From the NCBI GenBank assembly GCA_020184695.1, contig JAANOX010000034.1, positions 1 through 64,000 of the forward strand: a stretch of 64,000 nt of DNA, written 5' to 3'. Below the pieces are notes generated by a model. That model searched no databases, was not told where the DNA came from, and worked only from the letters and a program-made list of their open reading frames with translations. Of the stretch, positions 25,019-62,362 are shown piece by piece. Each line of letters opens with the position of its first letter. Position 1 is the stretch's first letter. Position numbers and translations under genes: made by a program. The stretch comes from Histomonas meleagridis 2922-C6/04-290x (taxonomy: Eukaryota > Protista > Parabasalia).

Positions 25019-26932
25019 TTACATTAGCACGATGAATTTATCTTCTTTGAAGTCATCTGCAAATGGATCTTCTTCAATACCTGAGATAGATATTCCTGTT
25101 GTAAATGTGTTTGTGGTATGGTTATTATCATTTTGTTGTTCTGAAATTTCATTTTCTGCAATTTCTTCTTTTTTATTTTTAATTAGAATCAATAATATAA
25201 TTAGTATTGAAATTATAATAATAACAACAACAATAACGCAGACAATTATTATGATAATTGTTGTCTTATTATCATTTGTTTGAAAATCATTGTTGTATAT
25301 AAACGTAAAGAAGTTCGAATAATAATTATAATATGTCGAATAAATGATGACTGTGTAATCATAATAAATAAATTCTGTTTCAATGTAAATGTTCGATGAA
25401 TTAATTTTAATTAGAGAAAGTGATTTTGTTTGTATTTCATAATAAGTAAATGATTGCGTAAATGATAATGTGACTGTTAATAGATATGAAAAAGATTTCG
25501 TTAAATCATTTTGAAATGATTCAGTAAATGTATTTGACTGAGAATATGTGTTACTATGACTTGATGAATTTAATGCTGGAAATGTAATGGACTTTGAATA
25601 TGTATAGCTATGACTGAATGTATTTGACTGAAAATATGCATTACTAAATGTATGTGATGCTGAAAATGAATGTGTTGGAATTGGATTGCAGCTTCCTTCT
25701 GCGTTTTCTTTGGCAACATCTAAATGTCCAAATTTACTTCCTTTATATGTTGAATATGTGATAACACTTGTTGAAACATTATAAAATGCATTTTCGCCAA
25801 TTTTTGGTTCTGAATCTCCATAATAATAAATGCATTGAAGTTGATAACAATTACCAAATGCTGAACTTCCAATATCTCTGATTCCATATCCAAGTATTAA
25901 TAATGTTAAATTAGAACATGATGAAAATGCTGAATTTCCAATTGTTGTAACTGAATTTGGAATTGTAATGTTGTTGATTGATGAACACAATGAAAATGCA
26001 CTACCGCCAATTGTTGTAACATTTCCTCCAAAAATTATCGTTTCTAATTGTGAACATAACGAAAACACATAACCTCCGATATTTGTAACTGAGTTACCAA
26101 AATTAACTGAAACAACTGAATGCCATGCTGAAAATGAACCACTTGGAATTTCATATATATTTTCACTGATAATTATAAATTTTGTTATGTTTTGATATTG
26201 AGATATTTCATTAAAATCATTTGAATTCATGATTGAAAGTGTTGAAGTATTTTCATAAAATATTTCATAAGAGTTCATGAAAAACATAAAAAAAATATAA
26301 ACAAAAATATTTTCAATTTTTTTCTTATCTTTTACTTTCAATGTATATTTGGTCGTTGATATTTTCTGAACTGAGATTGTGTTTTTCTGATAAAATTTGA
26401 CATAAATAACCGGAAATGTAATTGAAAAAATGATGGTTAATTGAAGTAAAACATTCAAAATGTTTGGTCCTTCTTCGTTGTCGTTTCGCATCATCAAAAA
26501 ATGTGAAAATTCACGTTTTATAGGATATACATCTTCATAAAATTTATTGTATGATTTATCAAATATGCCATTTTTGACAAATATATCAATTTCGAAGTAT
26601 TTTTTCAAAATGTTTGAAAAATATGTTCTTGGAATTTTATGTTTGTTATTAAAATCCTGATGTACAATTGCTGTAGATTCATTATTTGGTATCAAATTTA
26701 AAAATAATTTGTTTATCAAAATTTTATAATTATTATGAAATCTTTGAAATTTTTTGTTCATAATTTCATTAATTGATACATCCCCATCACATTTGTAAGT
26801 CATACTTTTCTTGTTTTCGTGGTTTTGTATTTGTAATATTTCTTTTTGAATGATATAAGGTGTAACAAGCTTTGTATCGGTTATAAATCGTTTCACCATG
26901 ATCGAAATGCTGAATAAAAGAAAGGTTCTCAT
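25019..26932 (-). CDS. BspA-like TpLRR protein B1 (intact, 637 aa): B-type N-module, long stalk, EEDPF tail
   Basis: TpLRR repeats, S/T-rich stalk, TM helix, tail GIEEDPFADDFKEDKF. Confidence 0.9.
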   Translation of the reverse strand: MRTFLLFSISIMVKRFITDTKLVTPYIIQKEILQIQNHENKKSMTYKCDGDVSINEIMNKKFQRFHNNYKILINKLFLNLIPNNESTAIVHQDFNNKHKIPRTYFSNILKKYFEIDIFVKNGIFDKSYNKFYEDVYPIKREFSHFLMMRNDNEEGPNILNVLLQLTIIFSITFPVIYVKFYQKNTISVQKISTTKYTLKVKDKKKIENIFVYIFFMFFMNSYEIFYENTSTLSIMNSNDFNEISQYQNITKFIIISENIYEIPSGSFSAWHSVVSVNFGNSVTNIGGYVFSLCSQLETIIFGGNVTTIGGSAFSLCSSINNITIPNSVTTIGNSAFSSCSNLTLLILGYGIRDIGSSAFGNCYQLQCIYYYGDSEPKIGENAFYNVSTSVITYSTYKGSKFGHLDVAKENAEGSCNPIPTHSFSASHTFSNAYFQSNTFSHSYTYSKSITFPALNSSSHSNTYSQSNTFTESFQNDLTKSFSYLLTVTLSFTQSFTYYEIQTKSLSLIKINSSNIYIETEFIYYDYTVIIYSTYYNYYSNFFTFIYNNDFQTNDNKTTIIIIIVCVIVVVIIIISILIILLILIKNKKEEIAENEISEQQNDNNHTTNTFTTGISISGIEEDPFADDFKEDKFIVLM

Positions 26933-27482
26933 GTTTCAGCTTGTAATATATATATAGACCTTCACCAATTATACATCGGCTATCTCAAAAGTTTAAAATC
27001 TCACGGTTAAACTTTTAAAAACCTGTTGGTTAATTGTCGTTTTTCAAACCAATTTTTGAAATATTTCTATCGATTTTTTTAAGACGACAATCAAAGAAAC
27101 AGCTTTATAACATTATATTTTTCACTTTTAAATAACACAATGAATATATGTTATAGAACGGAATTTATGCTTTAATTTGGTGTGCCGTTCATTTATCAAA
27201 GATGTTTCCATCATCACAAAATTAACACTTTTTTATAACATTGGCAATTCAGCTATTTCTTGTTTGAATATTTATGATTTTATATAAAATAAACAAAATA
27301 TAAGGAGTTCTTTATGTCCGAAATCAATTACATTGTATCTTTAATTTATAAAATATTTTTCGATTTTGAGAATAAAAGTAAAAATGATATTTCGTTAATA
27401 TGATTTCATTTTATTTTATATGACAACACTTAATTATTATATATACTTTAAATTAATAAATGTTTTTTATGACACATTTTCT

Positions 27483-29245
27483 TCAGAGCCAATTGTCTTC
27501 ATCTTCTTTCACAATATCTTCAACTAAACTATTTACTTCTTCGATTTGCTTTGTACTTGATGTCGTCGTGTCCTTAAATTGTAACTTTGATTTCGATTTT
27601 TCTTTCTTATTATTACTTTTCACTAAAAATATAACAATTCCAACAATGATCAAAACAAATGCAAATGATCCGCAAATAATTCCAATCAAAGCATTCGTCG
27701 TAATTCCTTTTGGTGAATTTTCATTGGAAGTGTAAAACATTGTAAAGAAATTGGAATAATAATTATAATAAGTCGAATATATAACAATCGTATAATTGTA
27801 ATAAATAAATTCTGTTTCAATATATGAAAATGTCGAATTATTGATATATAATGAAAATGTTTTCGTTTGTGTTTCATAAATAGTTAATGAATGTGTTATT
27901 GATAATGTAATTGTTAATGTATATGAAAATGATAATGATAATGAAATATCACTTTGAAGTGATGCTGTAAATGTATTCGATTGACTAAATGAATGTGTTG
28001 GAATTGGATTGCAGCTTCCTTCTGCGTTTTCTTTGGCAACATCTAAATGTCCAAATTTACTTCCTTTATATGTTGAATATGTGATAACACTTGTTGAAAC
28101 ATTATAAAATGCATTTTCGCCAATTTTTGGTTCTTTGTCGCCATAATAATAAATGCATTGAAGTTGATAACAATTACCAAATGCTGAACCTCCAATATCT
28201 CTGATTCCATATCCAAGTATTAATAATGTTAAATTAGAACATGATGAAAATGCTGAATTTCCAATTGTTGTAACTGAATTTGGAATTGTAATGTTGTTGA
28301 TTGATGAACACAATGAAAATGCACTACCGCCAATTGTTGTAAAATTTTCTCCAAATATAATCGTTTCTAAATTAAAACATGACGAAAACGCATAACCTCC
28401 AATATTTGTGACTGAATTACCAAAATTAACTGAAACAACTGATGGCCAATTTGAAAATGCATTACTTGGAATTGAATAAATTCCTTCACTAATATATATA
28501 AATTTCGTGATGTTTTGATATTGAACAGTTTCATTAAAATCACTTGAGTTTGTTATTATTAATGTTAAATTATCACCACAAAATAATTGAAAAGAATTTA
28601 TGAAAAATACAACAAAAATTAAAACATTTTTATGTTTTTTCTTTTTGCTTGTTTTCAATTCGTAGTTGGTCAAAGAAAATTTCTGTGGAAACAGTGGTTT
28701 TCTCTGAAAAAAATTGACATAAACCACCACAATCATCATTGAAAATATAGCGGTTAAACGAACATAAGCATTGAATTTAAATGGTCTGACTTGTTTATCG
28801 TTTGGCATCAATGCAAAACAAAGAAACTCATACTGGATTAAAGATATATTCCCATAATGAATCTTTAAAGCTTGTGTTGATATATTGTTTTCAATAATCA
28901 TAATGGTTGTAAAGAATTTATTTTGTGAAATTGTAAAATATGATGCTAGGAATTTTATTTTGTCATAAAAGAATTGAAGTATTTCTGATTTACACTTACT
29001 GTCAGTCAAGAAATTTAAAAATATACTTGTTTTAAAGAAAGCAGAATTATTGATATATCAAAATTTGCATACGTAATTCCAAAGACTGGAACTACTACAT
29101 TGCGTGTATAAGAGTGCCCTTCTTTGCTTAGGTTCTTTTTCATATTTGATATTTTTGTGGTTGTAAAAAATGGTATACCTGGTATTATGTCGGTTGTAAA
29201 ATGCTTTGTTAAGGCCGAAATGAACAGCAATTGAAGAGTTTTCAC
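27483..29245 (-). pseudogene. BspA-like protein C1: N-module damaged (GTG at the position where B copies have ATG, frameshift near 29050), LRR-TM part intact, EDEDNWL tail
   Basis: 29015-29245 (VKTLQLLFISALTKHFTTD) is homologous to the B1 start (MRTFLLFSISIMVKRFITD). 27483-29009 is open from a TTG. Confidence 0.8.
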
Positions 29246-30122
29246 GGTTTATGACCTAATATAGTTGAAGGCCTTTGCCAAATACACATCGGCCAATACA
29301 AAAGTTAAAAATCATACGGTTAACATGAAAAAAATTTGTTTCTTTTTTGAAGTTTTTCAATTTAACCTAAGATTTGTTTTTTTCAATATTTAAAGACGCC
29401 CACTATAGATAATACATTAAAATGCTTGCAAAAGCACTTTTAAATAATATAATGAATGTGTTAGAGCTGAGTTTGCTGATCAAAATTATATATATTTGTT
29501 GTTGTTGAGCACTTTTTATAGTATTAAATTTCATGATTTTTGAGAGATATGCGTTTTATCCTAATTTTGTAACTTTATTTTGTCGATACAAGTTATGTGA
29601 ATAAACTAAACACATCCTAATATAGAAAAGAGATATTTTGTATAATTAAGTGATATACTGTAAGAAAAACATATCATTGTATGTTAATAAATTGTAAATA
29701 AAGTTATATCACAAACTTCATATCTTATTACTTCTATATTAATGGCGATTGTTAATCGATTGATTGTAATTATCTTTATATATAATGTTTTGCAATATGA
29801 ATGCTTTTCATTTAAATAATTTAGTTTTCCATTAATGTTTTGTAAAGTAACTTAATGATTCATATCATTTACATTTAACATCTGATACTTTACGAAAAAT
29901 TTCTATTGTAAACTATAAATCATTTGTAAATAAATGAGTAATGTCTTATTCTATTTGAACTTTAGAAAGTTTCATCAAAACAATATTCAACATTTTCGAT
30001 ATTTTCATTGTTAATTATAGCAAAATGAAAATCGATTAATATTTCTCATTGCGAATCACTTCATAATATTTATTTAAATTAAAAATATATCAATTAAAAA
30101 TATATTTTTATTTTACATTAAA

Positions 30123-31925
30123 TCATAGCCAATTGTCTTCATCTTCTTTAACAATATCTTCAACTAAAGTATTGACATCTTCAATTTGGTTTAAACTTGA
30201 TGTAGTCGAATCCTTAAATTGTAATGTCGATGTCGATTTTCCTTTTTTGTTATTACTTTTGATTAAGAATAAAACAATTCCAACAATTATTAATACTAAT
30301 GCAATTGATCCGCAAACAATTCCAATCAATGCATTCGTTGTAAGTCCATTTGTATGTAAAATGTTCGTGCGAAACATTGTAATGAAATTTGAATAATAAT
30401 TATAATGTGTTGAATACATAATAACTGTGTAATCATAATAAAGAAATTCTGTTTCGACATAAGAAAATGTTGAATTAAATATGGATAATGAAAGCGATCT
30501 TGTTTGCGTCTCATAATAAGTAAATGAATATGCAATTGTGAGCGTAAGTGTTAATGTATATGAAAATGATAATGTTAAATCGCTTTGAAACGATTCAGTG
30601 AATGTATTTGACTGAGAATATGTATTACTACTACTGAATATATTTGACTGAGAATATGTGTTACTTTGGCTAAATGTATTTGACTGAGAATATGTATTAC
30701 TACTACTGAATATATTTGACTGAAAATATGTGTTACTAAATGTATGTGATGCTGAAAATGAATGTGTTGGAATTGGATTGCAGCTTCCTTCTGCGTTTTC
30801 TTTGGCAACATCTAAATGTCCAAATTTACTTCCTTTATATGTTGAATATGTGATAACACTTGTTGAAACATTATAAAATGCATTTTCGCCAATTTTTGGT
30901 TCTGAATCTCCATAATAATAAATGCATTGAAGTTGATAACAATTACCAAATGCTGAACTTCCAATTTCTCTTATTCCATATCCAAGTATTAATAATGTTA
31001 AATTAGAACATGATGAAAATGCTGAATTTCCAATTGTTGTAACTGAATTTGGAATTGTAATGTTGTTGATTGATGAACACAATGAAAATGCACTACCGCC
31101 AATTGTTGTAACATTTCCTCCAAAAATTATCGTTTCTAATTGTGAACATAACGAAAACACATAACCTCCGATATTTGTAACTGAGTTACCAAAATTAACT
31201 GAAACAACTGAATGCCATGCTGAAAATGAACCACTTGGAATTTCATATATATTTTCACTGATAATTATAAATTTCGTGATGTTTTGATATTGAACAGTTT
31301 CATTAAAATCACTTGAGTTTGTTATTATTAATGTTAGGTTATCATCACAAAATAATTGAAAAGAATTTATGAAAAATACAACAAAAATTAAAACATTTTT
31401 ATGTTTTTTCTTTTTGCTTGTTTTCAATTTATTAACTAAAAATTTAATTTCAGAACATAAAAAAAAACCGAAAATAAAAAAGCATTGCATTAGAGCTTGA
31501 ACATTTCCATTGAATTTGAACATTTTCATCATGAAGTTATTATTCATTGAAATTGGTAAATGAACTTTTAATGAAAAATGATTAAACACTAAAGAAAAGA
31601 ATTCGATATAATGTTTAACAGATGAAATCGGTAATTCTAACAAAGGGGAATGACACTGATATCTGCTTGTACTGGTATTAAAAGGATTCCATTCATTATC
31701 TTTTAGCATAATAAAATTTGTGTTTTTAATGGATACACTCTCTTCGTTATGGAGTGAGAATGAGAGGTATGTAGTCCCTTTGGATTCTAAAGTAAGACAA
31801 GGGGAATGCTTGAGAGTTTGAGAAATAGAAAATTGATTACTAAAAATCTTTGAACCTGAATTTTTTGGTGAGGTTTGTAATAAGCAAATGATATGCATGG
31901 GTAAAAACAAAAGGAAAGAACACAT
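30123..31925 (-). CDS. BspA-like TpLRR protein D1 (intact, 600 aa): D-type N-module, repeat-expanded stalk, EDEDNWL tail
   Basis: ATG start, TpLRRs, QSNIFSSSNTYS/QSNTFS repeats, TM helix, tail. Confidence 0.9.
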   Translation of the reverse strand: MCSFLLFLPMHIICLLQTSPKNSGSKIFSNQFSISQTLKHSPCLTLESKGTTYLSFSLHNEESVSIKNTNFIMLKDNEWNPFNTSTSRYQCHSPLLELPISSVKHYIEFFSLVFNHFSLKVHLPISMNNNFMMKMFKFNGNVQALMQCFFIFGFFLCSEIKFLVNKLKTSKKKKHKNVLIFVVFFINSFQLFCDDNLTLIITNSSDFNETVQYQNITKFIIISENIYEIPSGSFSAWHSVVSVNFGNSVTNIGGYVFSLCSQLETIIFGGNVTTIGGSAFSLCSSINNITIPNSVTTIGNSAFSSCSNLTLLILGYGIREIGSSAFGNCYQLQCIYYYGDSEPKIGENAFYNVSTSVITYSTYKGSKFGHLDVAKENAEGSCNPIPTHSFSASHTFSNTYFQSNIFSSSNTYSQSNTFSQSNTYSQSNIFSSSNTYSQSNTFTESFQSDLTLSFSYTLTLTLTIAYSFTYYETQTRSLSLSIFNSTFSYVETEFLYYDYTVIMYSTHYNYYSNFITMFRTNILHTNGLTTNALIGIVCGSIALVLIIVGIVLFLIKSNNKKGKSTSTLQFKDSTTSSLNQIEDVNTLVEDIVKEDEDNWL

Positions 31926-32880
31926 TTGCGAGAAAACTTGAGAAACTTGCTAATAAATCAGTCAAAAACGATACAGAGAGCTTCAACCGCTTCTTCTTTT
32001 CGTCAGTTCATTTGTAAAACTTTTGCTGAAACGCGTTTTGTTGTTTTTGCAATCGGAAGATGTTCACAAAGCTGAAATGTAATGATTTTTATGAAAAGTG
32101 ACAGAATTTTCCCTTATTTAAATTGTAAAAGAAGACAAAAAAATGAAAGAAAGAAAATGATATCGTTTAGCATCAAAGGAACGGATTTTTGAATAAAGAG
32201 CGCTCAAAAAGTTTGTTTCAATAGAACAATAAATTGAATTTTGCAATTCAAATAACTGCTGACAAGATGGCCATGGGTGGGTTCAATTATTTGACACTTT
32301 TCGTAATATTAAGAAACCTTTTTCTTAATTTAACACAAGAAAATTTGTAAATTTATCAATTGAAAGCGTGCTCTGATAAATAAACGGTCGAAAATAGTTC
32401 GTCAATTTTAAAAAATAAATGTTTTCTCAATGGATATCAAGGCAATCGTAAAATCATAAGGTTGTCAATCAGACTACATATTATTCTATTTTTATACAAT
32501 TTTCAATAATGAAGGAAAAAATGAAAATCAAAACAAAGAAACAGAAAAAATTATTGTTTTTGTAATTTTTATTCAGATTTTTTTTTTCAAATATATCATA
32601 ATAAATCAATAAAATACTTTTTTAACCTTTTGAACATGCTCTCCCCAATAAACATAAGGTCTGATGTTTTCTGTTTAAAATAAATTTTCACAGGATTTCA
32701 CCCAGGCTAACTCTAGTACAAATCTTTCACAAGTATTTTATCTATGCAAAATATTTCATTTATTTAAATTGTTTTCATAATTTAAAGAACATATAAAAAC
32801 ATTTCTTATGTTTTAAAAATTTATTTTAATATTTACACACCCTATTTAGATAACATTTTCATATTAAAAAATCATTTTTA

Positions 32881-35626: not shown

Positions 35627-35748
35627 GTCACATGACTTTGGATAAAGCTAAATTCAGAAGTTTATGAATAAAAATTCAAAGCCGATCAAAAGCAAGATGT
35701 GTTGATCGGAATGACAACGATAGTTAAATAATTCACTGAAAACCTCCA

Positions 35749-38094: not shown

Positions 38095-38169
38095 AATTTG
38101 TTTATAATAAAAAGCGTTTGTAATTAAATTGTTTATTGTAAAAGTGTGGGGAGGACGTTTGAAGCTAAA

Positions 38170-43533: not shown

Positions 43534-44338
43534 TTGACAAGTGAAAGCGTTTTCTGTCAATTTGCCGACAAAAACCGCACCTTCAAATCATGAAACGATG
43601 GGCTTTTTTAGAGAAGAAAATGATCGTGTTAATTCAAAAAGCTTCAAAAAAGGAGCTGGATAAAGGATGTTAGGTGAAGTGATTTGATTTCATGTGAAAA
43701 GTTCGAAATTTTTCTTCTATTTGCCATATATATAAATAAGGTTGAGATTACAACACAATAATTAAAATAAAACAAAAGTGTGAAAACCTCGGTCAAAAAA
43801 TACCTTGAAGTTTCTTGGATTCCCGAATCTCCATATTTAAATATCTTATTCATTAATATTCAGGATTTATTAATCATTGAGAAAAATGAAATTCCCTATT
43901 AAAAATTAAGTGATCATATGATAGTTCAAGTTAGTTTTTACATGATGTGGATTAAAGGCTTGCCGTTGAAGATACCTCAGCACTTGTAAGACTTTCGCTG
44001 TAACATGTATACTATTTGTATAGTTGGATATTGGTGTACATGAAAGAGTAAGAATTAACTTGATTAAGGCCAGTTTAATGAATAATGATTTGGGAATTTT
44101 CAAGTACTTCCTTGTTTTGGTGTTGTTGAATAAGCTAATCAATTGATTTTGTTGTATTTTTTGGAGTAATTCAATGTTATAAATCTTTTCTTATGAATAA
44201 TGCCATAGTCGAAAACACAGGAAAATGTCTTCCAATATGGAAGAAATGAATATTATCAAATTAATAACGAAATCTCTCTATAAAATTTAATCTGAATAAG
44301 GAAAATAAATTTAAATTGTATTTTTATTGATAATTATA

Positions 44339-46147
44339 TTAAATTTGTGCAATAAATTTTTCTTCTTGAAAATCTTCGGCAAATGGATCTTCTTCAATAT
44401 TTATGTTACTTATTCCTGTTGTAAATGTATTCGTCGTTTCGTTTTCATTTTCTTCTGATTTATCATTTTCATAAATTTCTTCTTTTTTATTTCGAATATG
44501 TGTCAATAATATAATTAATAATATGATAATGACTATTACTATAACAATTACACAAACAGAAATGATGATAATTGTTGTTTTATTGTCTTTATTTTGATTA
44601 TTATTATCATTATTATCAGTGTAAAACATTGTAAAGAAATTGGAATAATAATTATAATAAGTCGAATATATAACAATCGTATAATTGTAATAAATAAATT
44701 CTGTTTCAATATATGAAAATGTCGAATGATTTATATATAATGAAAATGTTTTTCGTTTTTGTTTCATAAATAGTTAATGAATGTGTAATTGATAATGTAA
44801 TTGTTAATGTATATGAAAATGATAATGATAATGAAATATCACTTTGAAGTGATACAGTAAATGTATTCGATTGACTAAATGAATGTGTTGGAATTGGATT
44901 GCAGCTTCCTTCTGCGTTTTCTTTGGCAACATCTAAATTTCCAAATTTACTTCCTTTATATGTTGAATATGTGATAACACTTGTTGAAACATTAAAAAAT
45001 GCATTTTCTTCAATTTTTGGTTCTGAATCTCCATAATAATAAATGCATTGAAGTTGATAACAATTACCAAATGCTGAACCTCCAATATCTCTTATTCCAT
45101 ATCCAAGTATTAATAATGTTAAATTAGAACAGAATGAAAACGCTCCACCGCCAATTGTTGTAACTGAATTTGGAATTGTAATGTTTATGATTGATGAACA
45201 CAATGAAAATGCACTACCGCCAATTGTTGTAACATTTCCTCCAAATATAATCGTTTCTAATTTTGAACATAACGAAAACACATAACCTCCAATACCTGAT
45301 ACTGAATTACCAAAATTCACTGAAACAACTGAATGCCATGCTGAAAATGAACCACTTGGAATTTCATATATATTTTCACTGATAATTATAAATTTTGTTA
45401 TGTTTTGATATTGGCTAATTTCATTAAAATCATTTGAATTCATGATTGAAAGTGTTGAAGTATTTTTCATAAAAGATTTCATAAGGGTTCATGAAAAAAA
45501 CATAAAAATATAAACAAAAATAATTTTTTTCTTATCTTTTACTTTCAATGTATATTTGGTCGTTGATATTTTCTGAACTGAGATTGTGTTTTTCTGGTAA
45601 AATTTGACATAAATAACCGGAAATATAATTGAAAAAATGATGGTTAATTGAAGTAAAACATTCAAAATGTTTGGTCCTTCTTCGTTGTCGTTTCGCATCA
45701 TCAAAAAATGTGAAAATTCACGCTTTATAGGATATATATCTTCATAAGATTTGTTATATGATTTATCAGATATACCATTTTTGACAAATATATCAATTTC
45801 AAAGCCTATTTTCAAAATGTTTGAAAAATATGTTCTTTGAAATTTTTGTTTGTTATTAAAATCATGATGTACAATTGCTGTAGATTCATTGTTTGGTATC
45901 AAATTTAAAAATAATTTGTTTATCAAAACTTTATAATTATTGTTAAATCTTTTTGAATTTTTTGATCATAATTTCATTGATTGGAACTTCTCCATCACAT
46001 TGGTAAGTCAATCCTTCCCCTGCTTTTTATCTTTTTTGTATCTTTGTATATTTTCTTTATGAATGATATAAGGTGTAATAAGCTGTGTATCGGTTATTAA
46101 TCGTTTTGTCATGATCAAAAATGATGGACAAAATGAAAGGTTCTCAT
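44339..46147 (-). pseudogene. BspA-like copy B2 (frameshifted or low-quality consensus)
   Basis: Colinear with 60563-62362. Indels in homopolymers near 44751 and 45465-45500; scrambled 5' part at 45930-46140. Confidence 0.85.
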
Positions 46148-46967
46148 GTTTCAGCTTGTAATATACTTATAGACCTTCACCAAATATACATCGGCTATCT
46201 CAAAAGTTTAAAATCTCACGGGTAAACATTAAAAAACCTGACGTTTAATTGTGGTCTTTTAAGTCAATTTTGAAACATTTGAATTAATATTTTAAAATGC
46301 CAATCGAAGAAACAACTATAACACATTATATTTTCACTTTTAAATAACACAATGAATATATGTTATAGAACGGAATTTAAGCTTTAATTTGATGTGCCGT
46401 TCATTGATTTAAAATGTTTTCATCATCATAAAATTTAATTTTTTTTTTGAAACATTGGAAATTCTTCTATAATATGATTTTAAGTTTCTTGTTTTATTCT
46501 AAATTAACATAACATGAGAAGCACTTTATGTACAAAATCATTTTTAGTGTATCTTTAATTTAAAAAATATTTTTTGCTTTTATAAATAATGAATTCAAGT
46601 AAAGTTTGTCCCATTTCATTCAGAAAAGTGCAAACATTAATGTAAATGTAATCATGATTCAAAATCATTGATCATTGATCAACAAAAGTTATTATGTTCT
46701 ATTTAAAGTCAGTAATAATAATAGTTATACATCTTTAAAATTCAAAATTTCTTATTAAAATGAAATAATTGCACACATTAAAAAGTCAAAATGCATCAAA
46801 ACAACAAGCGATTAATTTTACTTTATTATTGATGTTTAACAATGCTAACACAATATCTTATAATATTTTACAATAAAAAAAATTCATCAAAAAACAAAAC
46901 AACACTCAAAATTTAATTTTAACTTATATAACAAAAGATATCAAAATTTTTTATTACACAGTTTTCT

Positions 46968-48504
46968 TCAGAGCCAATTGTCTTCATCTTCTTTCACAAT
47001 ATCTTCAACTAAACTATTTACTTCTTCAATTTGCTTTGTACTTGATGTCGTCGTGTCCTTGAATTGTAACTTTGATTTCGATTTTTCTTTCTTATTATTA
47101 CTTTTTCACTAAAAATATAACAATTCCAACAATGATCAAAACAAATGCAAATGATCCGCAAATAATTCCAATCAAAGCATTCGTCGTAATTCCTTTTGGT
47201 GAATTTTCATTGGAAGTGTAAAACATTGTAAAGAAATTGGAATAATAATTATAATAAGTCGAATATATAACAATCGTATAATTGTAATAAATAAATTCTG
47301 TTTCAATATATGAAAATGTCGAATTGTTTATATATAATGAAAATGTTTTCGTTTTTGTTTCATAAATAGTTAATGAATGTGTAATTGATAATGTAACTGT
47401 TAATGTATATGAAAATGATAATGATAATGAAATATCACTTTGAAGTGATGCTGTAAATGTATTCGATTGACTAAATGAATGTGTTGGAATTGGATTGCAG
47501 CTTCCTTCTGCGTTTTCTTTGGCAACATCTAAATTTCCAAATTTACTTCCTTTTATATGTTGAATATGTGATAACACTTGTTGAAACATTAAAAATGCAT
47601 TTTCGCCAATTTTTTTGGTTCTTTGTCTCCATAATAATAAATGCATTGAAGTTGATAACAATTAGCAAATGCTGAACCTCCAATATCTCTTATTCCATAT
47701 CCAAGTATTAATAATGTTAAATTATAACAGAATTAAAACTCTCCACCTCCAATTGTTGTAACTGAATTTGGAATTGTAATGTTTTTGATTGATGAACACA
47801 ATGAAAATGCACTACCGCCAATTGTTGTAACATTTCCTCCAAAAATTATCGTTTCTAATTGTGAACATGACGAAAACACAGAACCTCCGATATTTGTAAC
47901 TGAATTACCAAAATCAACTGAAACAACTGAATGCCATGCTGAAAATGAACCACTTGGAATTTCATATATATTTTCACTGATAATTATAAATTTTGTTATG
48001 TTTTGATATTGGCTAATTTCATTAAAATCATTTGAATTCATGATTGAAAGTGTTGAAGTATTTTCATAAAATATTTCATAAGAGTTCATGAAAAACATAA
48101 AAAAAATTAAAATATTTTTCTGTTTTTTATTTTCGTTACTTTTAAATATATTCATTAAAAATTTGATTTCATATAATAAAAAAAATCCCAAAATAAAAAA
48201 GTTATACATTCGAACTTGAACAGTTTCATTGAATTTGAACATTTTCATCATGAAGTTATTATTCATTGAAATTGGTAAATGAACTTTTAATGAAAAATGA
48301 TTAAACACTAAAGAAAAGAATTCGATATAATGTTTAACATATGATATCGGAAACCTTAATAAAGGGGAATGACGTTGATATTCTTCTGTGATGATATTGA
48401 ATGTATTCGATTCATTCGCTTTTAGAATAATAAAATTTGTGTTTTTAATGGATACACTCTCTTTGTTATGGAGTGAGAATGAGAGGTATGTAATCCCTTT
48501 GGAT
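46968..48504 (-). pseudogene. BspA-like copy D2: D-type N-module with start and signal deleted, C/F-type stalk and EDEDNWL tail, several frameshifts
   Basis: The 48504/48505 junction joins sequences matching D1 31785 and 31961. ORF pieces 47733-48530 and 47098-47661; TGA at 46968-46970. Confidence 0.85.
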
Positions 48505-48829
48505 GTCAAAAACGATACAGAGAGCTTCAACCGCTTCTTCTTTTCGTCAGTTCATTTGTAAAACTTTTGCTGAAACGCGTTTTGTTGTTTTTGCAATCGG
48601 AAGATGTTCACAAAGCTGAAATGTAATGATTTTTATGAAAAGTGACAGAGTGTTCCCTTATTTAAATTGTGGAAGAAGTCAAAAAAATGAAAGAAAGAAA
48701 ATGATATCGTTTAGCATCAAAGGAACGGATTTTTGAATAAAGAGCACTCAAAAAGTTTGTTTCAACACAATCAACATGTTTCAACTTATCAGAGAAATTT
48801 TTTAGGAGATTTAAACAGTTTACACATAG

Positions 48830-54421: not shown

Positions 54422-54966
54422 AAACTTGAAAAATTGTTTGTAAAAATATTTATATATTATTAATTGTGGTTTTGAAATCAATTTAAAAAAAAAAAAAAAA
54501 TTGATTACTTTCTAAAAAAATTTCAAATCGGACTTTCATGAGCTAAATCGATTTAATGCATTTTAAAGTCAGATATGAACGAATTACTACAAATTAATAA
54601 CAAATCTTTAGTCATCGAAGCGACCGTTTGTTATTAGGAATGATAAATACGACAGGGTGCTCCATCTTCATGTTCTAATTTTTCATTATGGATTTCGTAA
54701 AATGTTTAGTAAAATATTGTACAACAAAAGCAAAATAGAATTTAGCACACATTGGTTTTTGGTTTTAGTGATTATTTGATGACATTTCTGACTTATATTG
54801 GTGAAACGTTTTCTGGCGTTGAAAATTCTGCAAATGAAATTGACGTCAAATACATTGAATTGTTTTTATGGCGAAAGATTGAATTGATTTGACAGATATT
54901 GATTCAATTGTGGATTTTAGATTGAAATGGCTTTGAATTTGTGTTAAACCGATACTAAAAAATTTT

Positions 54967-56946: not shown

Positions 56947-58222
56947 CGGATTTTTTATAATAAAATAAAGAGCGTTGTGTTTAACTTTAAATCGTATTAT
57001 AAAGGATTTAATCATTTTTTATATTTTGTGAAAGATAAAATATGGCGAAGTATTGTTGAGTCAGATGTTTGGGGTTCAGATATTTACATAGTGATAGATC
57101 TCAATTTAGAAATTCTGAAATATCCTGCTGTGATCATACTGTTGATTGATATTCTATATTCCTTAAACTGCACTTGTTGTTTTTAATAGTATTTTTGCAA
57201 TTTAAACTTATTTATTATCTGTGTTGAGAAAAATGAGTAAAACATATAATATTGTCACTTTTTGTACTTTGACCTGTTTGAACCAGTTTAATTTAACAAA
57301 GTAAATATGTATAATTTCCTGCCTTATTGCTTGTTGTTTTATTGGTATTTTTGGAGAAAGATATTTCTTTTTTGCCTTCACCAAAAACAGTTATGTTGAT
57401 AAGGGCAAAAAAGGATAAATAATAAAAAATAAGAATGTTTCCTTCTTAAGACATAGTTTTAATCTTAATTTATAATTTTTTATTTACAATAAAATTTACA
57501 AATAAAATATAAACAAGAAGTAATTTTTTAAATGTATATTGGAGGATATATTTGTAATGTTTTAGATTCCGAATATTTGCAACATTCATATCTCAGCATC
57601 CACAATATTTTGGAATGAACCGAATGTAGATTTCATCAGCACCAAAATGTTCATTGGCAATGAATAATTTCATCTTTTAAAACATCATCTAGATATGTAT
57701 AGATTTTAAAATATGGTGCCCGGCTGAAGTGATTATAATTTATGGCTATAAAATTTTATAAATTTTTTAAATAAATATTTTTTGATAATGAGTTTTTATT
57801 CTACCAAATTCTTTGATTCTCGTGTGTTATACAAAAACTTCTCATTTGAGTTATAAAGAGATCAAAAGTAATGGAAAAGATTGTTTTATGTATAGATCTT
57901 TATATAATCGCGAAATTAACAAAATTCGATTTTCCACAATTTTATTCTGCTTTATTCTTAAAAAAAATTTCGATAATAAAATATACAAACAAAATGCAAA
58001 TAGTATGTATAAAGATTTAGAAAGTAAATAAGTTTAATGAATTCATTGGAACCAAAGTGACTTTTTGAAAACGCTGGCTCAGCTGTTATAAAAGCACATT
58101 TGTGATATCTACAAAAAACTTAATTCCCATAAAATTAATATTTGCTTGTTTTGAATGATGAATTTTAAGCGACCGTTATTTGCCAACACACAAACATTCA
58201 TCATTATTCAGTTACAGCAAAA

Positions 58223-59873
58223 ATGTATGATTTTCTATTGGCTTTTCCGATTCATTTCTTTTGTTCATTTCAACTTTCTTCAGGAATTTCAGGTTTAATG
58301 GTTTTTAATGATAAATTTTCTATTTTGCAAATTCAAAAAAGTAAAATTTTGCATATTCTCGACAACATAAGAGGTACACATTTTGTACTCTCGCATTATG
58401 AAAAAGATAAAGATAAGTATCGATTTTACTTTAACTTAAAAAGATATCATTACAAACCACCTTTATCAGAATTATTAATCACATACACTAAGCATAACTC
58501 TGAGTTATTTTTTATGGAGTTTAATTATTTTAATCAAAAAAAATATAATGCAATCTCGAAGCAAAATATTTTTAGAAAGAAAATGCTTATGCTTAATAAA
58601 ATAATTCGATTTCTAGCATTAAGCTTTATGATTTTTAAGTGTTTTTTATATATTCAAAATAAAATAATTTTTATAATTAAATTTTTAGTTAATAAATCGA
58701 AAATGAAAGAAAAATAAAAAACAGAAAAATGTTTTAATTTTTTTTATGTTTTTCATGAACTCTTATGAAATATTTTATGAAAATACTTCAACACTTTCAA
58801 TCATGAATTCAAATGATTTTAATGAAATATCTCAATATCAAAACATAACAAAATTTATAATTATCAGTGAAAATATATATGAAATTCCAAGTGGTTCATT
58901 TTCAGCATGGCATTCAGTTGTTTCAGTTGATTTTGGTAATTCAGTTACAAATATCGGAGGTTCTGTGTTTTCGTCATGTTCACAATTAGAAACGATAATT
59001 TTTGGAGGAAATGTTACAACAATTGGCGGTAGTGCATTTTCATTGTGTTCATCAATCAAAAACATTACAATTCCAAATTCAGTTACAACAATTGGCGGTG
59101 GAGCGTTTTCATTCTGTTCTAATTTAACATTATTAATACTTGGATATGGAATAAGAGATATTGGAGGTTCAGCATTTGGTAATTGTTATCAACTTCAATG
59201 CATTTATTATTATGGAGACAAAGAACCAAAAATTGGCGAAAATGCATTTTTTAATGTTTCAACAAGTGTTATCACATATTCAACATATAAAGGAAGTAAA
59301 TTTGGAAATTTAGATGTTGCCAAAGAAAACGCAGAAGGAAGCTGCAATCCAATTCCAACACATTCATTTAGTCAATCGAATACATTTACTGTATCACTTC
59401 AAAGTGATATTTCATTATCATTATCATTTTCATATACATTAACAGTTACATTATCAATTACACATTCATTAACTATTTATGAAACAAAAACGAAAACATT
59501 TTCATTATATATAAACAATTCGACATTTTCATATATTGAAACAGAATTTATTTATTACAATTATACGATTGTTATATATTCGACTTATTATAATTATTAT
59601 TCCAATTTCTTTACAATGTTTTACACTTCCAATGAAAATTCACCAAAAGGAATTACGACGAATGCTTTGATTGGAATTATTTGCGGATCATTTGCATTTG
59701 TTTTGATCATTGTTGGAATTGTTATATTTTTAGTGAAAAGTAATAATAAGAAAGAAAAATCGAAATCAAAGTTACAATTCAAGGACACGACGACATCAAG
59801 TACAAAGCAAATCGAAGAAGTAAATAGTTTAGTTGAAGATATTGTGAAAGAAGATGAAGACAATTGGCTCTGA
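58223..59873 (+). CDS. BspA-like protein F: diverged D-type N-module (58223-58717) joined to the LRR-TM part (58746-59873) across a +1 homopolymer frameshift
   Basis: MYDFLLAFPIHFFCSFQ aligns to D1 MCSFLLFLPMHIICLLQ. Removing one A from gAAAAAt near 58712 gives KENKKQKNVLIFFMFFMNSY. Tail is identical to C1. Confidence 0.82.
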
Positions 59874-60562
59874 AGAAAATGTGTCATAAAAAACATTTAT
59901 TAATTTAAAGTATATATAATAATTAAGTGTTGTCATATAAAATAAAATGAAATCATATTAACGAAATATCATTTTTACTTTAAAATGTTTTGAATTATTT
60001 TATTTAAATATGAAATTTTGAAATTTATGATGTTTAACTAGTAACAACAACTTCGAATTCTGATTGTAAATACATTAAATGTTAGCTTTTGAATGAAATT
60101 GGATAAACTTTATTTGAATTCATTATTCTCAAAATCGAAAAATATTTTATAAATTAAAGATATAATGTAATTGATTTCGGACATAAAGAACTCCTTATAT
60201 TTTGTTTATTTTATATAAAATCATAAATATTCAAACAAGAAATAGCTGAATTGCCAATGTTATAAAAAAGTGTTAATTTTGTGATGATGGAATCATCTTT
60301 GATAAATGAACGGCACACCAAATTAAAGCATAAATTCCGTTCTATAACATATATTCATTGTGTTATTTAAAAGTGAAAATATAATGTTATAAAGCTGTTT
60401 CTTTGATTGTCGTCTTAAAAAATCGATAGAAATATTTCAAAATTGGTTTGAAAAACGACAATTAACCAACAGGTTTTTAAAAGTTTAACCGTGAGATTTT
60501 AAACTTTTGAGATAGCCGATGTATAATTGGTGAAGGTCTATATATATATTACAAGCTGAAAC

Positions 60563-62362
60563 ATGAGAACCTTTCTTTTATTCAGCATTTCGATCATGGT
60601 GAAACGATTTATAACCGATACAAAGCTTGTTACACCTTATATCATTCAAAAAGAAATATTACAAAAACAAAACCACGAAAACAAGAAAAGTATGACTTAC
60701 AAATGTGATGGGGATGTAACAATTAATGAAATTATGAACAAAAAATTTCAAAGATTTCATAATAATTATAAAATTTTGATAAACAAATTATTTTTAAATT
60801 TGATACCAAATAATGAATCTACAATGGTTGTACATCAGGATTTTAATAACAAACATAAAATTCCAAGAACATATTTTTCAAACATTTTGAAAATAGGCTT
60901 TGAAATTGATATATTTGTCAAAAATGGTATATCTGATAAATCATATAACAAATCTTATGAAGATATATATCCTATAAAGCGTGAATTTTCACATTTTTTG
61001 ATGATGCGAAACGACAACGAAGAAGGACCAAACATTTTGAATGTTTTACTTCAATTAACCATCATTTTTTCAATTATATTTCCGGTTATTTATGTCAAAT
61101 TTTATCAGAAAAACACAATCTCAGTTCAGAAAATATCAACGACCAAATATACATTGAAAGTAAAAGATAAGAAAAAAATTGAAAATATTTTAATTTTTTT
61201 TATGTTTTTCATGAACTCTTATGAAATATTTTATGAAAATACTTCAACACTTTCAATCATGAATTCAAATGATTTTAATGAAATATCTCAATATCAAAAC
61301 ATAACAAAATTTATAATTATCAGTGAAAATATATATGAAATTCCAAGTGGTTCATTTTCAGCATGGCATTCAGTTGTTTCAGTTGATTTTGGTAATTCAG
61401 TTACAAATATCGGAGGTTCTGTGTTTTCGTCATGTTCACAATTAGAAACGATAATTTTTGGAGGAAATGTTACAACAATTGGCGGTAGTGCATTTTCATT
61501 GTGTTCATCAATCAAAAACATTACAATTCCAAATTCAGTTACAACAATTGGCGGTGGAGCGTTTTCATTCTGTTCTAATTTAACATTATTAATACTTGGA
61601 TATGGAATAAGAGAAATTGGAGGTTCAGCATTTGGTAATTGTTATCAACTTCAATGCATTTATTATTATGGAGATTCAGAACCAAAAATTGGCGAAAATG
61701 CATTTTTTAATGTTTCAACAAGTGTTATCACATATTCAACATATAAAGGAAGTAAATTTGGAAATTTAGATGTTGCCAAAGAAAACGCAGAAGGAAGCTG
61801 CAATCCGATTCCAACACATTCATTTAGTCAATCGAATACATTTACTGTATCACTTCAAAGTGATATTTCATTATCATTATCATTTTCATATACATTAACA
61901 ATTACATTATCAATTACACATTCATTAACTATTTATGAAACAAAAACGAAAACATTTTCATTATATATAAATCATTCGACATTTTCATATATTGAAACAG
62001 AATTTATTTATTACAATTATACGATTGTTATATATTCGACTTATTATAATTATTATTCCAATTTCTTTACAATGTTTTACACTGATAATAATGATAATGA
62101 TAATCAAAACAACGACAATAAAACAACAATTATCATCATTTCTGTTTGTGTAATTGTTATAGTTATTATCATCACCGTATTACTCATCATATTATTAAAA
62201 CATGTTCAAAACAAGAAAGAAGAAATTCATGAAAATGTTAATTCAGAAGAAAATGAAAATGAAATGATGAATACATTTACTACAGGAATAAGTAACATAA
62301 ATATTGAAGAAGATCCATTTGCTGAAGATTTCAAAGAAGAAAAATTTATTGCACAAATATAA
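60563..62362 (+). CDS. BspA-like TpLRR protein B3 (intact, 599 aa): B-type N-module, short stalk, EEDPF tail
   Basis: N-module nearly identical to B1; LRR and stalk nearly identical to F; tail NIEEDPFAEDFKEEKF. Confidence 0.9.
   Translation: MRTFLLFSISIMVKRFITDTKLVTPYIIQKEILQKQNHENKKSMTYKCDGDVTINEIMNKKFQRFHNNYKILINKLFLNLIPNNESTMVVHQDFNNKHKIPRTYFSNILKIGFEIDIFVKNGISDKSYNKSYEDIYPIKREFSHFLMMRNDNEEGPNILNVLLQLTIIFSIIFPVIYVKFYQKNTISVQKISTTKYTLKVKDKKKIENILIFFMFFMNSYEIFYENTSTLSIMNSNDFNEISQYQNITKFIIISENIYEIPSGSFSAWHSVVSVDFGNSVTNIGGSVFSSCSQLETIIFGGNVTTIGGSAFSLCSSIKNITIPNSVTTIGGGAFSFCSNLTLLILGYGIREIGGSAFGNCYQLQCIYYYGDSEPKIGENAFFNVSTSVITYSTYKGSKFGNLDVAKENAEGSCNPIPTHSFSQSNTFTVSLQSDISLSLSFSYTLTITLSITHSLTIYETKTKTFSLYINHSTFSYIETEFIYYNYTIVIYSTYYNYYSNFFTMFYTDNNDNDNQNNDNKTTIIIISVCVIVIVIIITVLLIILLKHVQNKKEEIHENVNSEENENEMMNTFTTGISNINIEEDPFAEDFKEEKFIAQI

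What the first reader, a model, noticed from the sequence alone, without database searches (positions are those of the whole stretch)
25019..62362. Combinatorial module shuffling among BspA genes through a near-identical LRR core: candidate surface-variation system
Seen: the combinations are B1 = N(B)+stalk1+DPF tail; C1 = N(C)+stalk2+NWL; D1 = N(D)+stalk3+NWL; D2 = N(D)+stalk2+NWL; F = N(D')+stalk2+NWL; B2 and B3 = N(B)+stalk2+DPF. Switch points are visible inside the core. D1 starts like C1 (NLTLIITNSSDFNETVQYQNITKFI) and continues like B1 (IISENIYEIPSGSFSAWHS). B2 has the B1-type VNFG..GYVFSLCS and then the B3/F-type IGGGAFSFC. Its N-module has B1 STAIV but B3 KIGFEID...SDKSYNKSYEDIY. Flanking modules are far more diverged than the core. 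Inference: recurrent ectopic conversion or recombination generates new ectodomain, stalk and trafficking-tail combinations, as in segmental antigenic variation. No recombinase is visible in the window.
Basis: partly seen in the sequence, partly recalled or inferred. Interest (0 to 1): 0.78.

Follow-up and report, generated by a model that had tools for sequence, protein, structure and literature searches.

The report
Gene conversion homogenises paired BspA genes
Seven surface-protein (BspA) genes of the poultry parasite Histomonas meleagridis really are patchworks of one another. The pattern fits ordinary recombination that keeps the middle of neighbouring genes identical, not a demonstrated antigen-switching system.

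Summary
The window is contig 34 of the attenuated-strain Histomonas meleagridis assembly (43,133,364 bp, 281 contigs).

**Observation: confirmed.**
- The seven BspA (PF13306) genes are mosaics at DNA level.
- MaxChi breakpoints give p<=0.0002, and PHI gave 0 of 1000 permutations.
- N-module data reject clades that the LRR data accept (AU p 1e-7 to 1e-48).

**Context that changes the reading.**
- The family has at least 45 genes.
- Two tail classes, ...EDEDNWL and ...EEDPFA..., also occur in a related organism at about 37% identity. They are saturated against each other (dS about 1), as are the main N-module types (dS about 1.5).
- The genes sit as an NWL-gene followed by a DPF-gene in at least 10 dispersed pairs.
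- In seven loci the adjacent genes are 93-100% identical over one sharply bounded ~0.9-kb LRR+stalk tract. In three intact pairs LRR dS is 0-0.02, against about 0.15 between loci.
- The LRR tree groups genes by location; the N and tail trees group them by type.
- N and tail types stay linked (30 of 34 genes, Fisher p=2e-5).

**Reading.** Local gene conversion plus occasional unequal crossing-over gives concerted evolution. That homogenises neighbours more than it diversifies them.

**Limits.** Programmed surface variation is neither shown nor excluded. Reads and the sister-strain assembly could not be reached. Other first-stage notes of this scan describe similar BspA patterns elsewhere in this genome.

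The parts
30123..31925 (-). D1: BspA gene with N5-type N module, own long stalk and a divergent NWL tail. It is the upstream member of cluster K1.
   Evidence: ORF and translation; PF13306. Nearest paralogs by segment are L005 for N, C1 then B1 for the core, and L037 for stalk and tail.
31265..31275 (-). D1 breakpoint: C1-like sequence 5' of it, 100% B1-identical LRR 3' of it.
   Evidence: MaxChi chi2=34.5, permutation p=0.0002. Coordinates; site pattern.
27483..29009 (-). C1: BspA gene with N2-type (short) N module, shared stalk and NWL tail. The first in-frame ATG is inferred at about 28901.
   Evidence: Breakpoint from D1-like to D2-like at 28237-28197.
25019..26932 (-). B1: BspA gene with N1-type N module, own stalk and a divergent DPF tail. 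It is the downstream partner of C1.
   Evidence: Breakpoint from B3-like to D1-like at 26183-26104.
47098..48530 (-). D2: NWL-type gene, N5-type N module (its 5' part differs, so it clustered alone), split into two ORF pieces. It is the upstream member of cluster K2.
   Evidence: The frame breaks are 1-2-nt length differences in A/T runs relative to F and L005.
44339..45926 (-). B2: DPF-type gene split into three ORF pieces. It is the downstream partner of D2 and 97.5% identical to intact paralog L011 on contig 256.
58223..59873 (+). F: NWL-type gene with an N4-type N module (58223-58717) out of frame with the LRR ORF (58746-59873). It is the upstream member of cluster K3.
   Evidence: There is a 5-nt indel relative to L028 at the N/LRR junction.
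60563..62362 (+). B3: intact DPF-type gene, downstream partner of F. It is a mosaic of B1-like and B2-like blocks.
   Evidence: Main switches lie at 60864-60894, 61077-61105 and 61515-61516.
61184..62081 (+). Homogenised LRR+stalk tract, given in B3 coordinates. Equivalents are F 58728-59625, D2 48116-47217, B2 45518-44620, C1 28628-27731, D1 31397-30368 and B1 26311-25294.
   Evidence: Adjacent-pair identity jumps from 50-65% to about 93-100% and back at the same two boundaries in seven loci. Coordinates.
58695..61844 (+). Core-to-core collinear tract of K3 against K1 (28660-25645). It runs from the LRR of the upstream gene, through tail and intergenic DNA, to the LRR end of the downstream gene.
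   Evidence: blastn gives 93.2% over 1287 bp plus 96.8% over 1733 bp. Homology stops at both outer core edges.

Best explanation
The seven genes belong to a family of at least 45 BspA-type membrane proteins in Histomonas meleagridis.

**Gene layout.** Each gene has an N-terminal module with hydrophobic segments, one LRR_5 domain, a Ser/Thr-rich stalk, a transmembrane helix and a short acidic tail.

**Basic genomic unit.** The unit is a head-to-tail pair. The upstream gene ends ...EDEDNWL, and about 2.1-2.6 kb downstream a second gene ends ...EEDPFA(E/D)DF.... Both tail classes, and the main N-module types, are old (shown).

**Mechanism.** The only long stretch of homology between the two partners is the ~0.9-kb LRR+stalk. 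General homologous-recombination machinery repeatedly copies that tract between neighbours, so it evolves in concert within a locus and diverges between loci. The pattern is shown; the mechanism is inferred.

**Hybrids.**
- Crossovers inside the same tract occasionally give hybrid or extra genes. Examples are N5+DPF, N1+NWL, triplets such as D1-C1-B1, and core-to-core duplicated segments (inferred from the products).
- The mosaics in the window are the local record of such events among three nearby pairs.

**Net effect.** Partners keep the same ectodomain with different ends. This is not free module shuffling.
For: **Family size.** There are 45 high-identity core matches from 463 first-look candidates. 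Further unscored partners were found on contigs 190, 191 and 197.

**Trees.**
- The LRR tree groups genes by location. C238, C153, C82, C104 and the C255 triple have 99-100% bootstrap, and the window genes plus L011 have 90/99.
- Location-label changes are 8 on the LRR tree against a null mean of 13.5 (minimum 11 of 300 shuffles). On the N and tail trees they are 14 and 13, which equals the null.

**AU tests.**
- N-module data reject 'window seven' (p=2.6e-47), F+B3 (8.5e-7) and B1+D1 (5.6e-48).
- LRR data do not reject these groupings (p=0.30, 0.12, 0.14).
- LRR data do reject a clade of all DPF-tailed genes (6.8e-54).

**Synonymous divergence.**
- Between types, N is 1.5 and tail 1.0, but LRR is 0.175 and stalk 0.16.
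- In adjacent pairs, LRR dS is 0-0.02.
- LRR dN/dS is about 0.85, so protein-level constraint does not explain the identity.

**Other.**
- The tract boundaries are the same in seven loci.
- Breakpoint and PHI tests are significant.
- Both tail classes are present in P0001 and P0019 at 36-38% identity.
- Rad51-family genes are present in the genome.
- Precedent: gene conversion in the T. vaginalis TMAC family (PMC2914791).
Against: - Everything rests on one ONT+Illumina (Flye plus racon) assembly. No reads or second assembly could be consulted.
- Single-SNP-scale mosaic patterns among 97-100% identical copies could be affected by short-read mis-polishing.
- Conversion versus repeated local duplication with end replacement cannot be formally separated from sequence alone. 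The constant NWL-then-DPF order in at least 10 loci makes the latter far less parsimonious.
- Some test groups were named after seeing the trees.
- In cluster K1 homogenisation is patchy (C1/B1 LRR dS 0.156), so conversion is not uniform.
Confidence: 0.8

Rival explanations
1. A working surface-variation system. Frequent mitotic segmental conversion among the BspA genes would create new ectodomain, stalk and tail combinations within a clone. Broken copies would serve as a donor archive, as in segmental antigenic variation.
For: - The recombination footprints are real and recent, with LRR dS of 0-0.02 in adjacent pairs.
- 14 of 40 copies are frame-broken.
- LRR dN/dS is about 0.85, with variation concentrated at the IGxx and FSxC repeat positions.
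- One of two coding regions with partial read support in the attenuated strain is a BspA-LRR gene, and its 'deletion' was not confirmed by PCR. A converted segment could look like that (PMC8529796).
- Noel et al. 2010 speculated on pseudogenes as a recombination reservoir.
Against: - The converted tract is homogenised, not diversified, within loci.
- N and tail types stay linked.
- The layout is conserved centre with divergent ends, the reverse of known cassette systems.
- Most copies are complete genes with their own starts and tails.
- The two strains, about 320 passages apart, are reported collinear with no rearrangements within contigs.
- Many frame breaks are 1-nt A/T homopolymer differences, typical of residual nanopore error.
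- No expression data were examined.
Confidence: 0.1
2. Assembly or polishing artefact. Chimeric consensus, or short reads mis-mapped among paralogs during racon polishing, created the apparent mosaics and the identical adjacent cores.
For: - The assembly used Flye on ONT reads, then three racon rounds with Illumina reads mapped by minimap2 at default settings.
- B2 and D2 carry many single-base homopolymer indels, which shows imperfect base accuracy in these paralogs.
- Some identical blocks (77-430 bp) are of read-length scale.
Against: - Mis-polishing needs copies that are already nearly identical. It cannot turn about 10-13% between-locus divergence into 98-100% identity only between neighbours, at the same boundaries, in seven independent loci.
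- The 0.9-kb tract and the 0.6-0.7-kb N modules are easily spanned by nanopore reads.
- Adjacent cores still differ at a few sites, about 8 for F versus B3.
- The large-scale module combinations recur on many contigs.
Confidence: 0.07
3. No recombination. The core is similar simply because purifying selection conserves the LRR and stalk while the ends drift.
For: The stalk and tails show purifying selection, with dN/dS of 0.24-0.44.
Against: - Synonymous divergence in the LRR is near zero in adjacent pairs, and LRR dN/dS is about 0.85.
- The core tree follows genomic location and conflicts with the N and tail trees at p down to 1e-54.
- Breakpoints and the PHI test are significant.
Confidence: 0.02

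Closest known systems
Trichomonas vaginalis BspA-like (TvBspA) family, Noel et al. 2010 (PMC2843621)
   Same: - LRR_5/TpLRR ectodomain, C-terminal transmembrane helix and short cytoplasmic tails that fall into conserved classes.
- One TvBspA class carries [DE]D[PS]FA, matching the EEDPFA tail seen here.
- Clusters formed by tandem and ectopic duplication.
- Many pseudogenes, and speculation that recombination generates diversity.
   Different: - The long N-terminal module upstream of the LRR.
- The fixed NWL-gene then DPF-gene pair.
- The sharply bounded homogenised LRR+stalk tract. None of these was described in the parts of that paper I searched.
- The ...EDEDNWL tail class is not among the two classes quoted there.
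- Only one LRR_5 block occurs per protein.
[quoted passage not shown] Examples are delta/beta-globin chimeric fusion genes (PMC4041002), Entamoeba Gal/GalNAc lectin genes (Weedall 2011, cited in PMC6917348) and T. vaginalis TMAC genes (PMC2914791).
   Same: - Paralogs in one locus are more alike than same-type genes between loci.
- Tree incongruence along the gene.
- Low dS inside the tract.
- Hybrid genes of the kind unequal crossovers produce.
- No dedicated recombinase is needed.
   Different: - The converted tract is an internal domain flanked on both sides by anciently diverged, essentially non-homologous modules.
- The same two boundaries recur in many dispersed copies of a two-gene unit.
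Segmental or mosaic antigenic variation (trypanosome VSG mosaics, Borrelia vlsE, Neisseria pilE/pilS, Anaplasma msp2). This comparison rests on general knowledge; the review by Deitsch et al. 2009 is cited in PMC2843621.
   Same: Gene conversion between family members creates mosaic surface-protein genes. Broken copies exist alongside intact ones.
   Different: - Those systems have expression sites plus silent partial donors.
- They have a variable centre between conserved ends.
- Their switching has been measured.
- Here the centre is the conserved, homogenised part, most copies are complete genes, and no switching has been observed.
Plant NLR / LRR resistance-gene clusters (Leister 2004, cited in PMC2843621)
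   Same: LRR genes in tandem and ectopic clusters. They undergo unequal crossing-over and conversion, with elevated dN/dS at exposed LRR positions.
   Different: The protein class and organism are unrelated. In plants, recombination in the LRR is usually discussed as a source of diversity, whereas here it mainly equalises neighbours.

Membership tests
BspA-like LRR surface proteins (Pfam PF13306, LRR_5 / TpLRR) | LRR_5 domain above Pfam's gathering score | tested here: met
   Scores are 91-100 bits against a cut-off of 27.7 for B1, C1, D1, B3 and F. AlphaFold2 gives a confident beta-strand repeat solenoid only for residues 220-407.
BspA-like LRR surface proteins (Pfam PF13306, LRR_5 / TpLRR) | C-terminal transmembrane helix with a short cytoplasmic tail of a conserved class | tested here: met
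   Kyte-Doolittle peaks of 3.1-4.0 lie at the C-terminal hydrophobic segment. The two tail classes split 28 NWL to 12 DPF among 40 genes. The DPF class matches the [DE]D[PS]FA motif of TvBspA. Surface location itself was not tested.
Concerted evolution by interlocus gene conversion | Phylogenetic incongruence between segments of the same genes | tested here: met
   AU tests are, label-change counts, and MaxChi and PHI.
Concerted evolution by interlocus gene conversion | Within-locus paralogs more similar than same-type genes between loci, at synonymous sites, inside a bounded tract | tested here: met
   Adjacent-pair LRR dS is 0-0.02 against 0.15-0.175 between loci. Common boundaries lie at about 61180 and 62070 in B3 coordinates in seven loci.
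Programmed segmental antigenic variation (VSG / vlsE / pilE-pilS / msp2 type) | Expression site(s) plus an archive of silent, partial donor cassettes | tested here: not met
   26 of 40 copies are full-length ORFs with their own N module, transmembrane helix and tail. No end-less cassettes were seen. Expression was not examined.
Programmed segmental antigenic variation (VSG / vlsE / pilE-pilS / msp2 type) | Variable exposed segment flanked by conserved sequence that guides recombination | tested here: not met
   The layout is the reverse. The centre is 85-94% identical family-wide, and the ends are unalignable between types.
Programmed segmental antigenic variation (VSG / vlsE / pilE-pilS / msp2 type) | Observed switching between clones or over time | not testable with these tools
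   No reads or second assembly were reachable. The published strain comparison reports collinearity (PMC8529796).
Assembly / polishing chimera | Mosaic junctions lack support from single spanning reads or from an independent assembly | not testable with these tools
The species' own proteins are withheld from the protein searches.

The most novel reading that the evidence does not exclude
The NWL/DPF pair may be a functional unit. The parasite would display one and the same LRR ectodomain on two anciently distinct N-module/anchor/tail chassis, for example with two trafficking or signalling fates. Conversion would be retained because it keeps the partners' ligand specificity matched while specificity diversifies between loci (LRR dN/dS about 0.85). 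On top of this, mitotic conversion could be frequent enough to change the repertoire within clonal lines. The unvalidated partial 'deletion' of BspA gene g7085vir in the attenuated strain would then be one such event.
Probability: 0.15. Interest if true: 0.65.

Novelty: new member of a known kind. Interest (0 to 1): 0.42.

Why it matters
- BspA proteins are the main candidate adhesins of trichomonads. In H. meleagridis more than 80% of them are predicted to be membrane-anchored, and a BspA-like protein is reported as up-regulated in a virulent strain (PMC8529796; PMC10063853).
- The family is built from a dispersed two-gene unit whose ectodomains are kept identical by conversion. This gives a concrete evolutionary model for the family.
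- It also warns that short-read mapping, PCR assays and orthology calls in this family will be confounded. The authors of the genome paper met this problem with g7085vir.
- It defines a simple test of whether the repertoire changes during passage or infection.
- It does not by itself reveal a new mechanism.

Tried and rejected
- **Independent support from another assembly.** Exact-protein look-ups for B3 and D1 found nothing, and my references included the stop codon.
- **The search for homologous proteins.** It returned no H. meleagridis proteins, so the species appears to be withheld. Hits were bacterial LRR proteins covering about 20% of the query, plus two full-length relatives.
- **Structure prediction.** It was confident only for the LRR (mean pLDDT 48). 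The N module stays unassigned and no fold search was run.
- **Pfam.** It gives nothing for the N module or tails beyond sub-threshold noise.
- **Purifying selection alone.** Rejected by the dS results.
- **B2 as the mosaic gene.** Rejected in favour of B3.
- **Literature searches.** BspA combined with gene conversion or concerted evolution found no paper analysing this in BspA genes.
- **The search of earlier findings by words.** It returned nothing.

Full report
**Source and gene set**

The window's genome has 43,133,364 bases in 281 contigs. These are exactly the figures published for the attenuated Histomonas meleagridis strain (Palmieri et al. 2021, PMC8529796). That assembly was made with Flye on nanopore reads and polished by three racon rounds with Illumina reads.

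The window is AT-rich, 24-39% GC in 2-kb windows. It holds ordinary eukaryotic genes: a Rab-type GTPase, ubiquitin hydrolases, a RhoGAP, a glycogen phosphorylase and NMD3.

It also holds seven paralogous genes. The five ORFs scanned (B1, C1, D1, B3 and F's LRR ORF) each have one PF13306 (BspA-type LRR_5) domain.
- B1: 25019-26932 (-)
- C1: 27483-29009 (-)
- D1: 30123-31925 (-)
- B2: 44339-45926 (-), in three ORF pieces
- D2: 47098-48530 (-), in two pieces
- F: 58223-59873 (+), with the N module out of frame with the rest
- B3: 60563-62362 (+)

**Is the mosaic really there?**

Yes. In a seven-gene MAFFT alignment, identity between pairs changes block by block.
- B1 and B3 are 94-100% identical through the N module.
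- D1 is C1-like just before the LRR, then 100% identical to B1 through most of the LRR.
- F, B3 and D2 are 100% identical in the first LRR blocks.
- B1, C1 and D1 share a block that the other four lack.
- The stalks of B1 and D1 are each unique (72-83% to all others), while the other five share one stalk (96-100%).
- The transmembrane-plus-tail region falls into an NWL class (C1, D1, D2, F) and a DPF class (B1, B2, B3).

The variable-site display shows the switches directly. Triplet maximum-chi-square tests with 5000 permutations give p=0.0002 for the following:

| Gene | Switch | Window coordinates |
|---|---|---|
| D1 | C1-like to B1-like | 31275/31265 |
| B1 | B3-like to D1-like | 26183-26104 |
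| C1 | D1-like to D2-like | 28237-28197 |
| B3 | alternates between B1-like and B2-like, at least three main switches | |

A PHI test on the seven-gene core gives 0.163 against a permutation mean of 0.407, with 0 of 1000 permutations as low. On the LRR of 40 family members, 13 of 1000 permutations were as low.

Exact identical runs reach 427 bp (F/B3), 343 bp (D2/F) and 302 bp (B1/D1).

1. B2 is not the recombinant. It matches paralog L011 on contig 256 along its whole length at 97.5%. The incompatible patterns among B1, B2 and B3 are best placed in B3.
2. F's N module is a separate type whose nearest relative is L028. It is not a variant of the D type.
3. The flanks are 'far more diverged than the core' only when different types are compared (figures below).
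4. B2 and D2 are frame-broken, and so is F's N module.

**Genome-wide context**

The 931-bp core of B3 has 45 scored matches at 76-100% identity on many contigs, out of 463 first-look candidates. I took 40 genes with flanks and later found further unscored partners.
- 26 of the 40 are intact ORFs of about 500-640 codons.
- Tails are of exactly two kinds: 28 end ...KEDEDNWL and 12 end ...EEDPFA(E/D)DF(K/Q)E(E/D)KF....
- N modules cluster into two large types, N5 (21 genes) and N1 (13 genes), plus rare types.
- N type and tail are strongly linked: N5 has 20 NWL and 1 DPF, and N1 has 10 DPF and 3 NWL (Fisher p=2e-5).
- All four combinations exist.

The genes are arranged as an NWL gene followed about 2.1-2.6 kb downstream by a DPF gene on the same strand. 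Three such pairs lie in the window: C1>B1, D2>B2 and F>B3. Others lie on contigs 238, 153, 82, 104, 190, 191 and 197. Contig 255 carries a triple.

Two full-length relatives come from metagenome contigs, at 36-38% identity to B3. P0001 carries an EEDPFADDFKEDKF tail and P0019 carries a KEDEDNWI tail. Each has the transmembrane segment that goes with its tail, and both have a recognisable N module. Both tail classes and the N module therefore predate this species, and the N module is coding.

**What the segments say**

Maximum-likelihood trees were built per segment for the 40 genes.

The LRR tree groups genes by genomic location, whatever their N or tail type.
- The pairs on contigs 238, 153 and 82 and the contig-255 triple have 99-100% bootstrap.
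- The contig-104 pair has identical LRRs.
- The seven window genes plus L011 have 90/99 support.

Counting changes of a location label (8 groups, 18 genes) gives the following:

| Tree | Location-label changes | Tail-label changes |
|---|---|---|
| LRR | 8 | 11 |
| Stalk | 9 | 10 |
| N module | 14 | 6 |
| TM + tail | 13 | 1 |
| Null from 300 shuffles | mean about 13.4, minimum 10-11 | - |

AU tests:

| Grouping tested | N-module data | LRR data |
|---|---|---|
| Window seven as one clade | rejected, p=2.6e-47 | not rejected, p=0.30 |
| F+B3 | rejected, p=8.5e-7 | not rejected, p=0.12 |
| B1+D1 | rejected, p=5.6e-48 | not rejected, p=0.14 |
| All DPF-tailed genes as one clade | rejected, p=0.0012 | rejected, p=6.8e-54 |

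Some of these groups were chosen after seeing the data.

**Synonymous divergence**

| Comparison | N module | LRR | Stalk | TM + tail |
|---|---|---|---|---|
| Same type, different loci (median dS) | 0.13-0.17 | 0.15-0.16 | 0.12 | 0.09-0.31 |
| Different type, different loci (median dS) | 1.5 | 0.175 | 0.16 | 1.0 |

- The adjacent pairs on contigs 238, 82 and 104 have LRR dS of 0.0-0.023.
- LRR dN/dS is about 0.76-0.9, so protein-level constraint cannot explain the identity.
- The stalk and tails show purifying selection, with dN/dS of 0.24-0.44.
- Amino-acid variation in the LRR is concentrated at the IGxx and FSxC positions of each repeat.

**Tract boundaries**

For seven loci, identity between adjacent genes rises from 50-65% to about 93-100% (60-bp windows) at B3-equivalent position ~61180. 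That point lies at the hydrophobic segment just before the LRR. Identity falls back to 42-65% at ~62070, the start of the transmembrane segment. The tract is about 0.9 kb.

In cluster K1 (D1, C1, B1) homogenisation is patchy and stops at the end of the LRR, because the three stalks differ.

Between clusters K3 and K1, homology is collinear from core to core: 58695-61844 against 28660-25645. It ends at both outer core edges. This is what exchange with end points inside the core would leave.

**Mechanism**

The best-supported reading is non-allelic homologous recombination limited by homology.

*Shown:*
- Recombination footprints.
- A location-structured core with near-zero dS between neighbours.
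- Tail classes, and main N-module types, saturated against each other.
- A conserved pair order.

*Inferred:*
- Short-tract gene conversion between neighbours is the main process.
- Unequal crossovers within the core gave the N5+DPF gene L010, which has no partner at the usual pair spacing, and the solitary N1+NWL gene L015.
- They also gave the N1+NWL genes in the contig-255 triple and the D1-C1-B1 triple.
- The units spread by segmental duplication.

No special enzyme is needed. Three strong and three weaker Rad51-family matches lie elsewhere in the genome.

Gene conversion in a trichomonad multigene family has precedent in the T. vaginalis transmembrane cyclases (PMC2914791). Tandem and ectopic duplication of BspA genes, conserved tail classes including [DE]D[PS]FA, and the idea of a recombinational reservoir were described or suggested for T. 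vaginalis (PMC2843621). My literature searches found no paper that analyses conversion in BspA genes.

**Surface-variation reading**

It is not supported, but it is not excluded.

*Against:*
- The process equalises rather than diversifies neighbouring ectodomains.
- N and tail types stay linked.
- The layout is conserved centre with divergent ends. By general knowledge this is the reverse of VSG, vlsE, pilE or msp2 systems.
- Most copies are complete genes.
- The genome paper reports high collinearity and no rearrangements within contigs between two strains of one clone sequenced at passages 28 and 346.

*For:*
- The recency of conversion.
- The high LRR dN/dS.
- The many frame-broken copies.
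- One of two regions with partial read support in the attenuated strain is a BspA-LRR gene (g7085vir), and its deletion was not validated by PCR. A converted segment could give that picture. This last point is my speculation.

**Artefact reading**

Base accuracy in these paralogs is imperfect. Relative to their closest paralogs, B2 and D2 differ by many 1-2-nt length changes in A/T runs. These may be residual nanopore errors or real slippage, so I do not call them pseudogenes.

Mis-polishing could blur single-SNP patterns among copies that are already 97-100% identical. It cannot produce 98-100% identity confined to neighbours, with common boundaries, in seven loci whose cores otherwise differ by about 10-13%.

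Direct confirmation was not possible.

**Protein architecture**

Hydropathy shows the following:
- A strong C-terminal transmembrane segment.
- A hydrophobic segment about 50 residues before the LRR.
- A shorter hydrophobic stretch preceded by a Lys-rich run immediately before the LRR.
- A hydrophobic N terminus in N5-type proteins.

A three-span topology with both the N module and the LRR outside the cell is possible, but it is only inferred.

AlphaFold2 on a 23-sequence family alignment was confident only for the LRR (residues 220-407, pLDDT 80-95). The N module and stalk scored below 50. Calling the two tails trafficking signals remains a hypothesis based on motif resemblance.

**Verdict**

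The recombination inference is right. The 'combinatorial surface-variation system' reading overstates it.

[quoted passage not shown] It has one unusual feature, a dispersed two-gene unit with a sharply bounded homogenised ectodomain.

Other first-stage notes of this scan describe similar BspA patterns on other contigs of this genome. They are unverified and were used only as leads.

Noticed in passing
window 44282-48168 (-) and 58675-62414 (+): Clusters K2 (D2>B2) and K3 (F>B3) are inverted copies of about 3.7 kb at 90-97.5% identity. They bracket about 10 kb that holds a ubiquitin hydrolase gene and a MyTH4-RhoGAP gene. Recombination between them could invert that segment.
   Followed up: partly
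P0001 and P0019 (ENA metagenome contigs of about 2 kb): These are full-length relatives at 36-38% identity, with the same N module, LRR, stalk and anchor layout. One has the EEDPFADDFKEDKF tail and the other a KEDEDNWI tail. They are 62% identical to each other and both have an N1-like N module. They presumably come from a related parabasalid.
   Followed up: partly
window 44339-48530: B2 and D2 differ from their closest paralogs by many 1-2-nt length changes in A/T homopolymers. This may reflect locally poor polishing of the nanopore consensus in multi-copy genes, so frame-broken BspA copies in this assembly need read-level checking.
   Followed up: partly
LRR of the family, B3 residues 227-414 (window 61241-61804): Between loci, LRR dN/dS is about 0.76-0.9. 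Amino-acid variation is concentrated at the two positions after IG and at the x of FSxC in each repeat. This is compatible with diversifying selection on exposed positions.
   Followed up: partly
L006 and L008 (G000 contig 255, about 86.9 and 89.5 kb): Two adjacent N1+NWL genes are 100% identical in the N module and tail and 88-100% in the core. This is either a very recent tandem duplication or a duplicated assembly segment.
   Followed up: no
window 18282-19994 (+): This is another BspA gene of a different subfamily: 570 aa, three LRR_5 stretches, E=1.3e-69. DNA similarity to the seven genes is only 68-75%.
   Followed up: no
PMC8529796, gene g7085vir (virulent strain, contig 51; not in this window): This BspA-LRR gene has only partial Illumina support in the attenuated strain, and its 'deletion' was not validated by PCR. 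A gene-conversion replacement would give the same picture.
   Followed up: no
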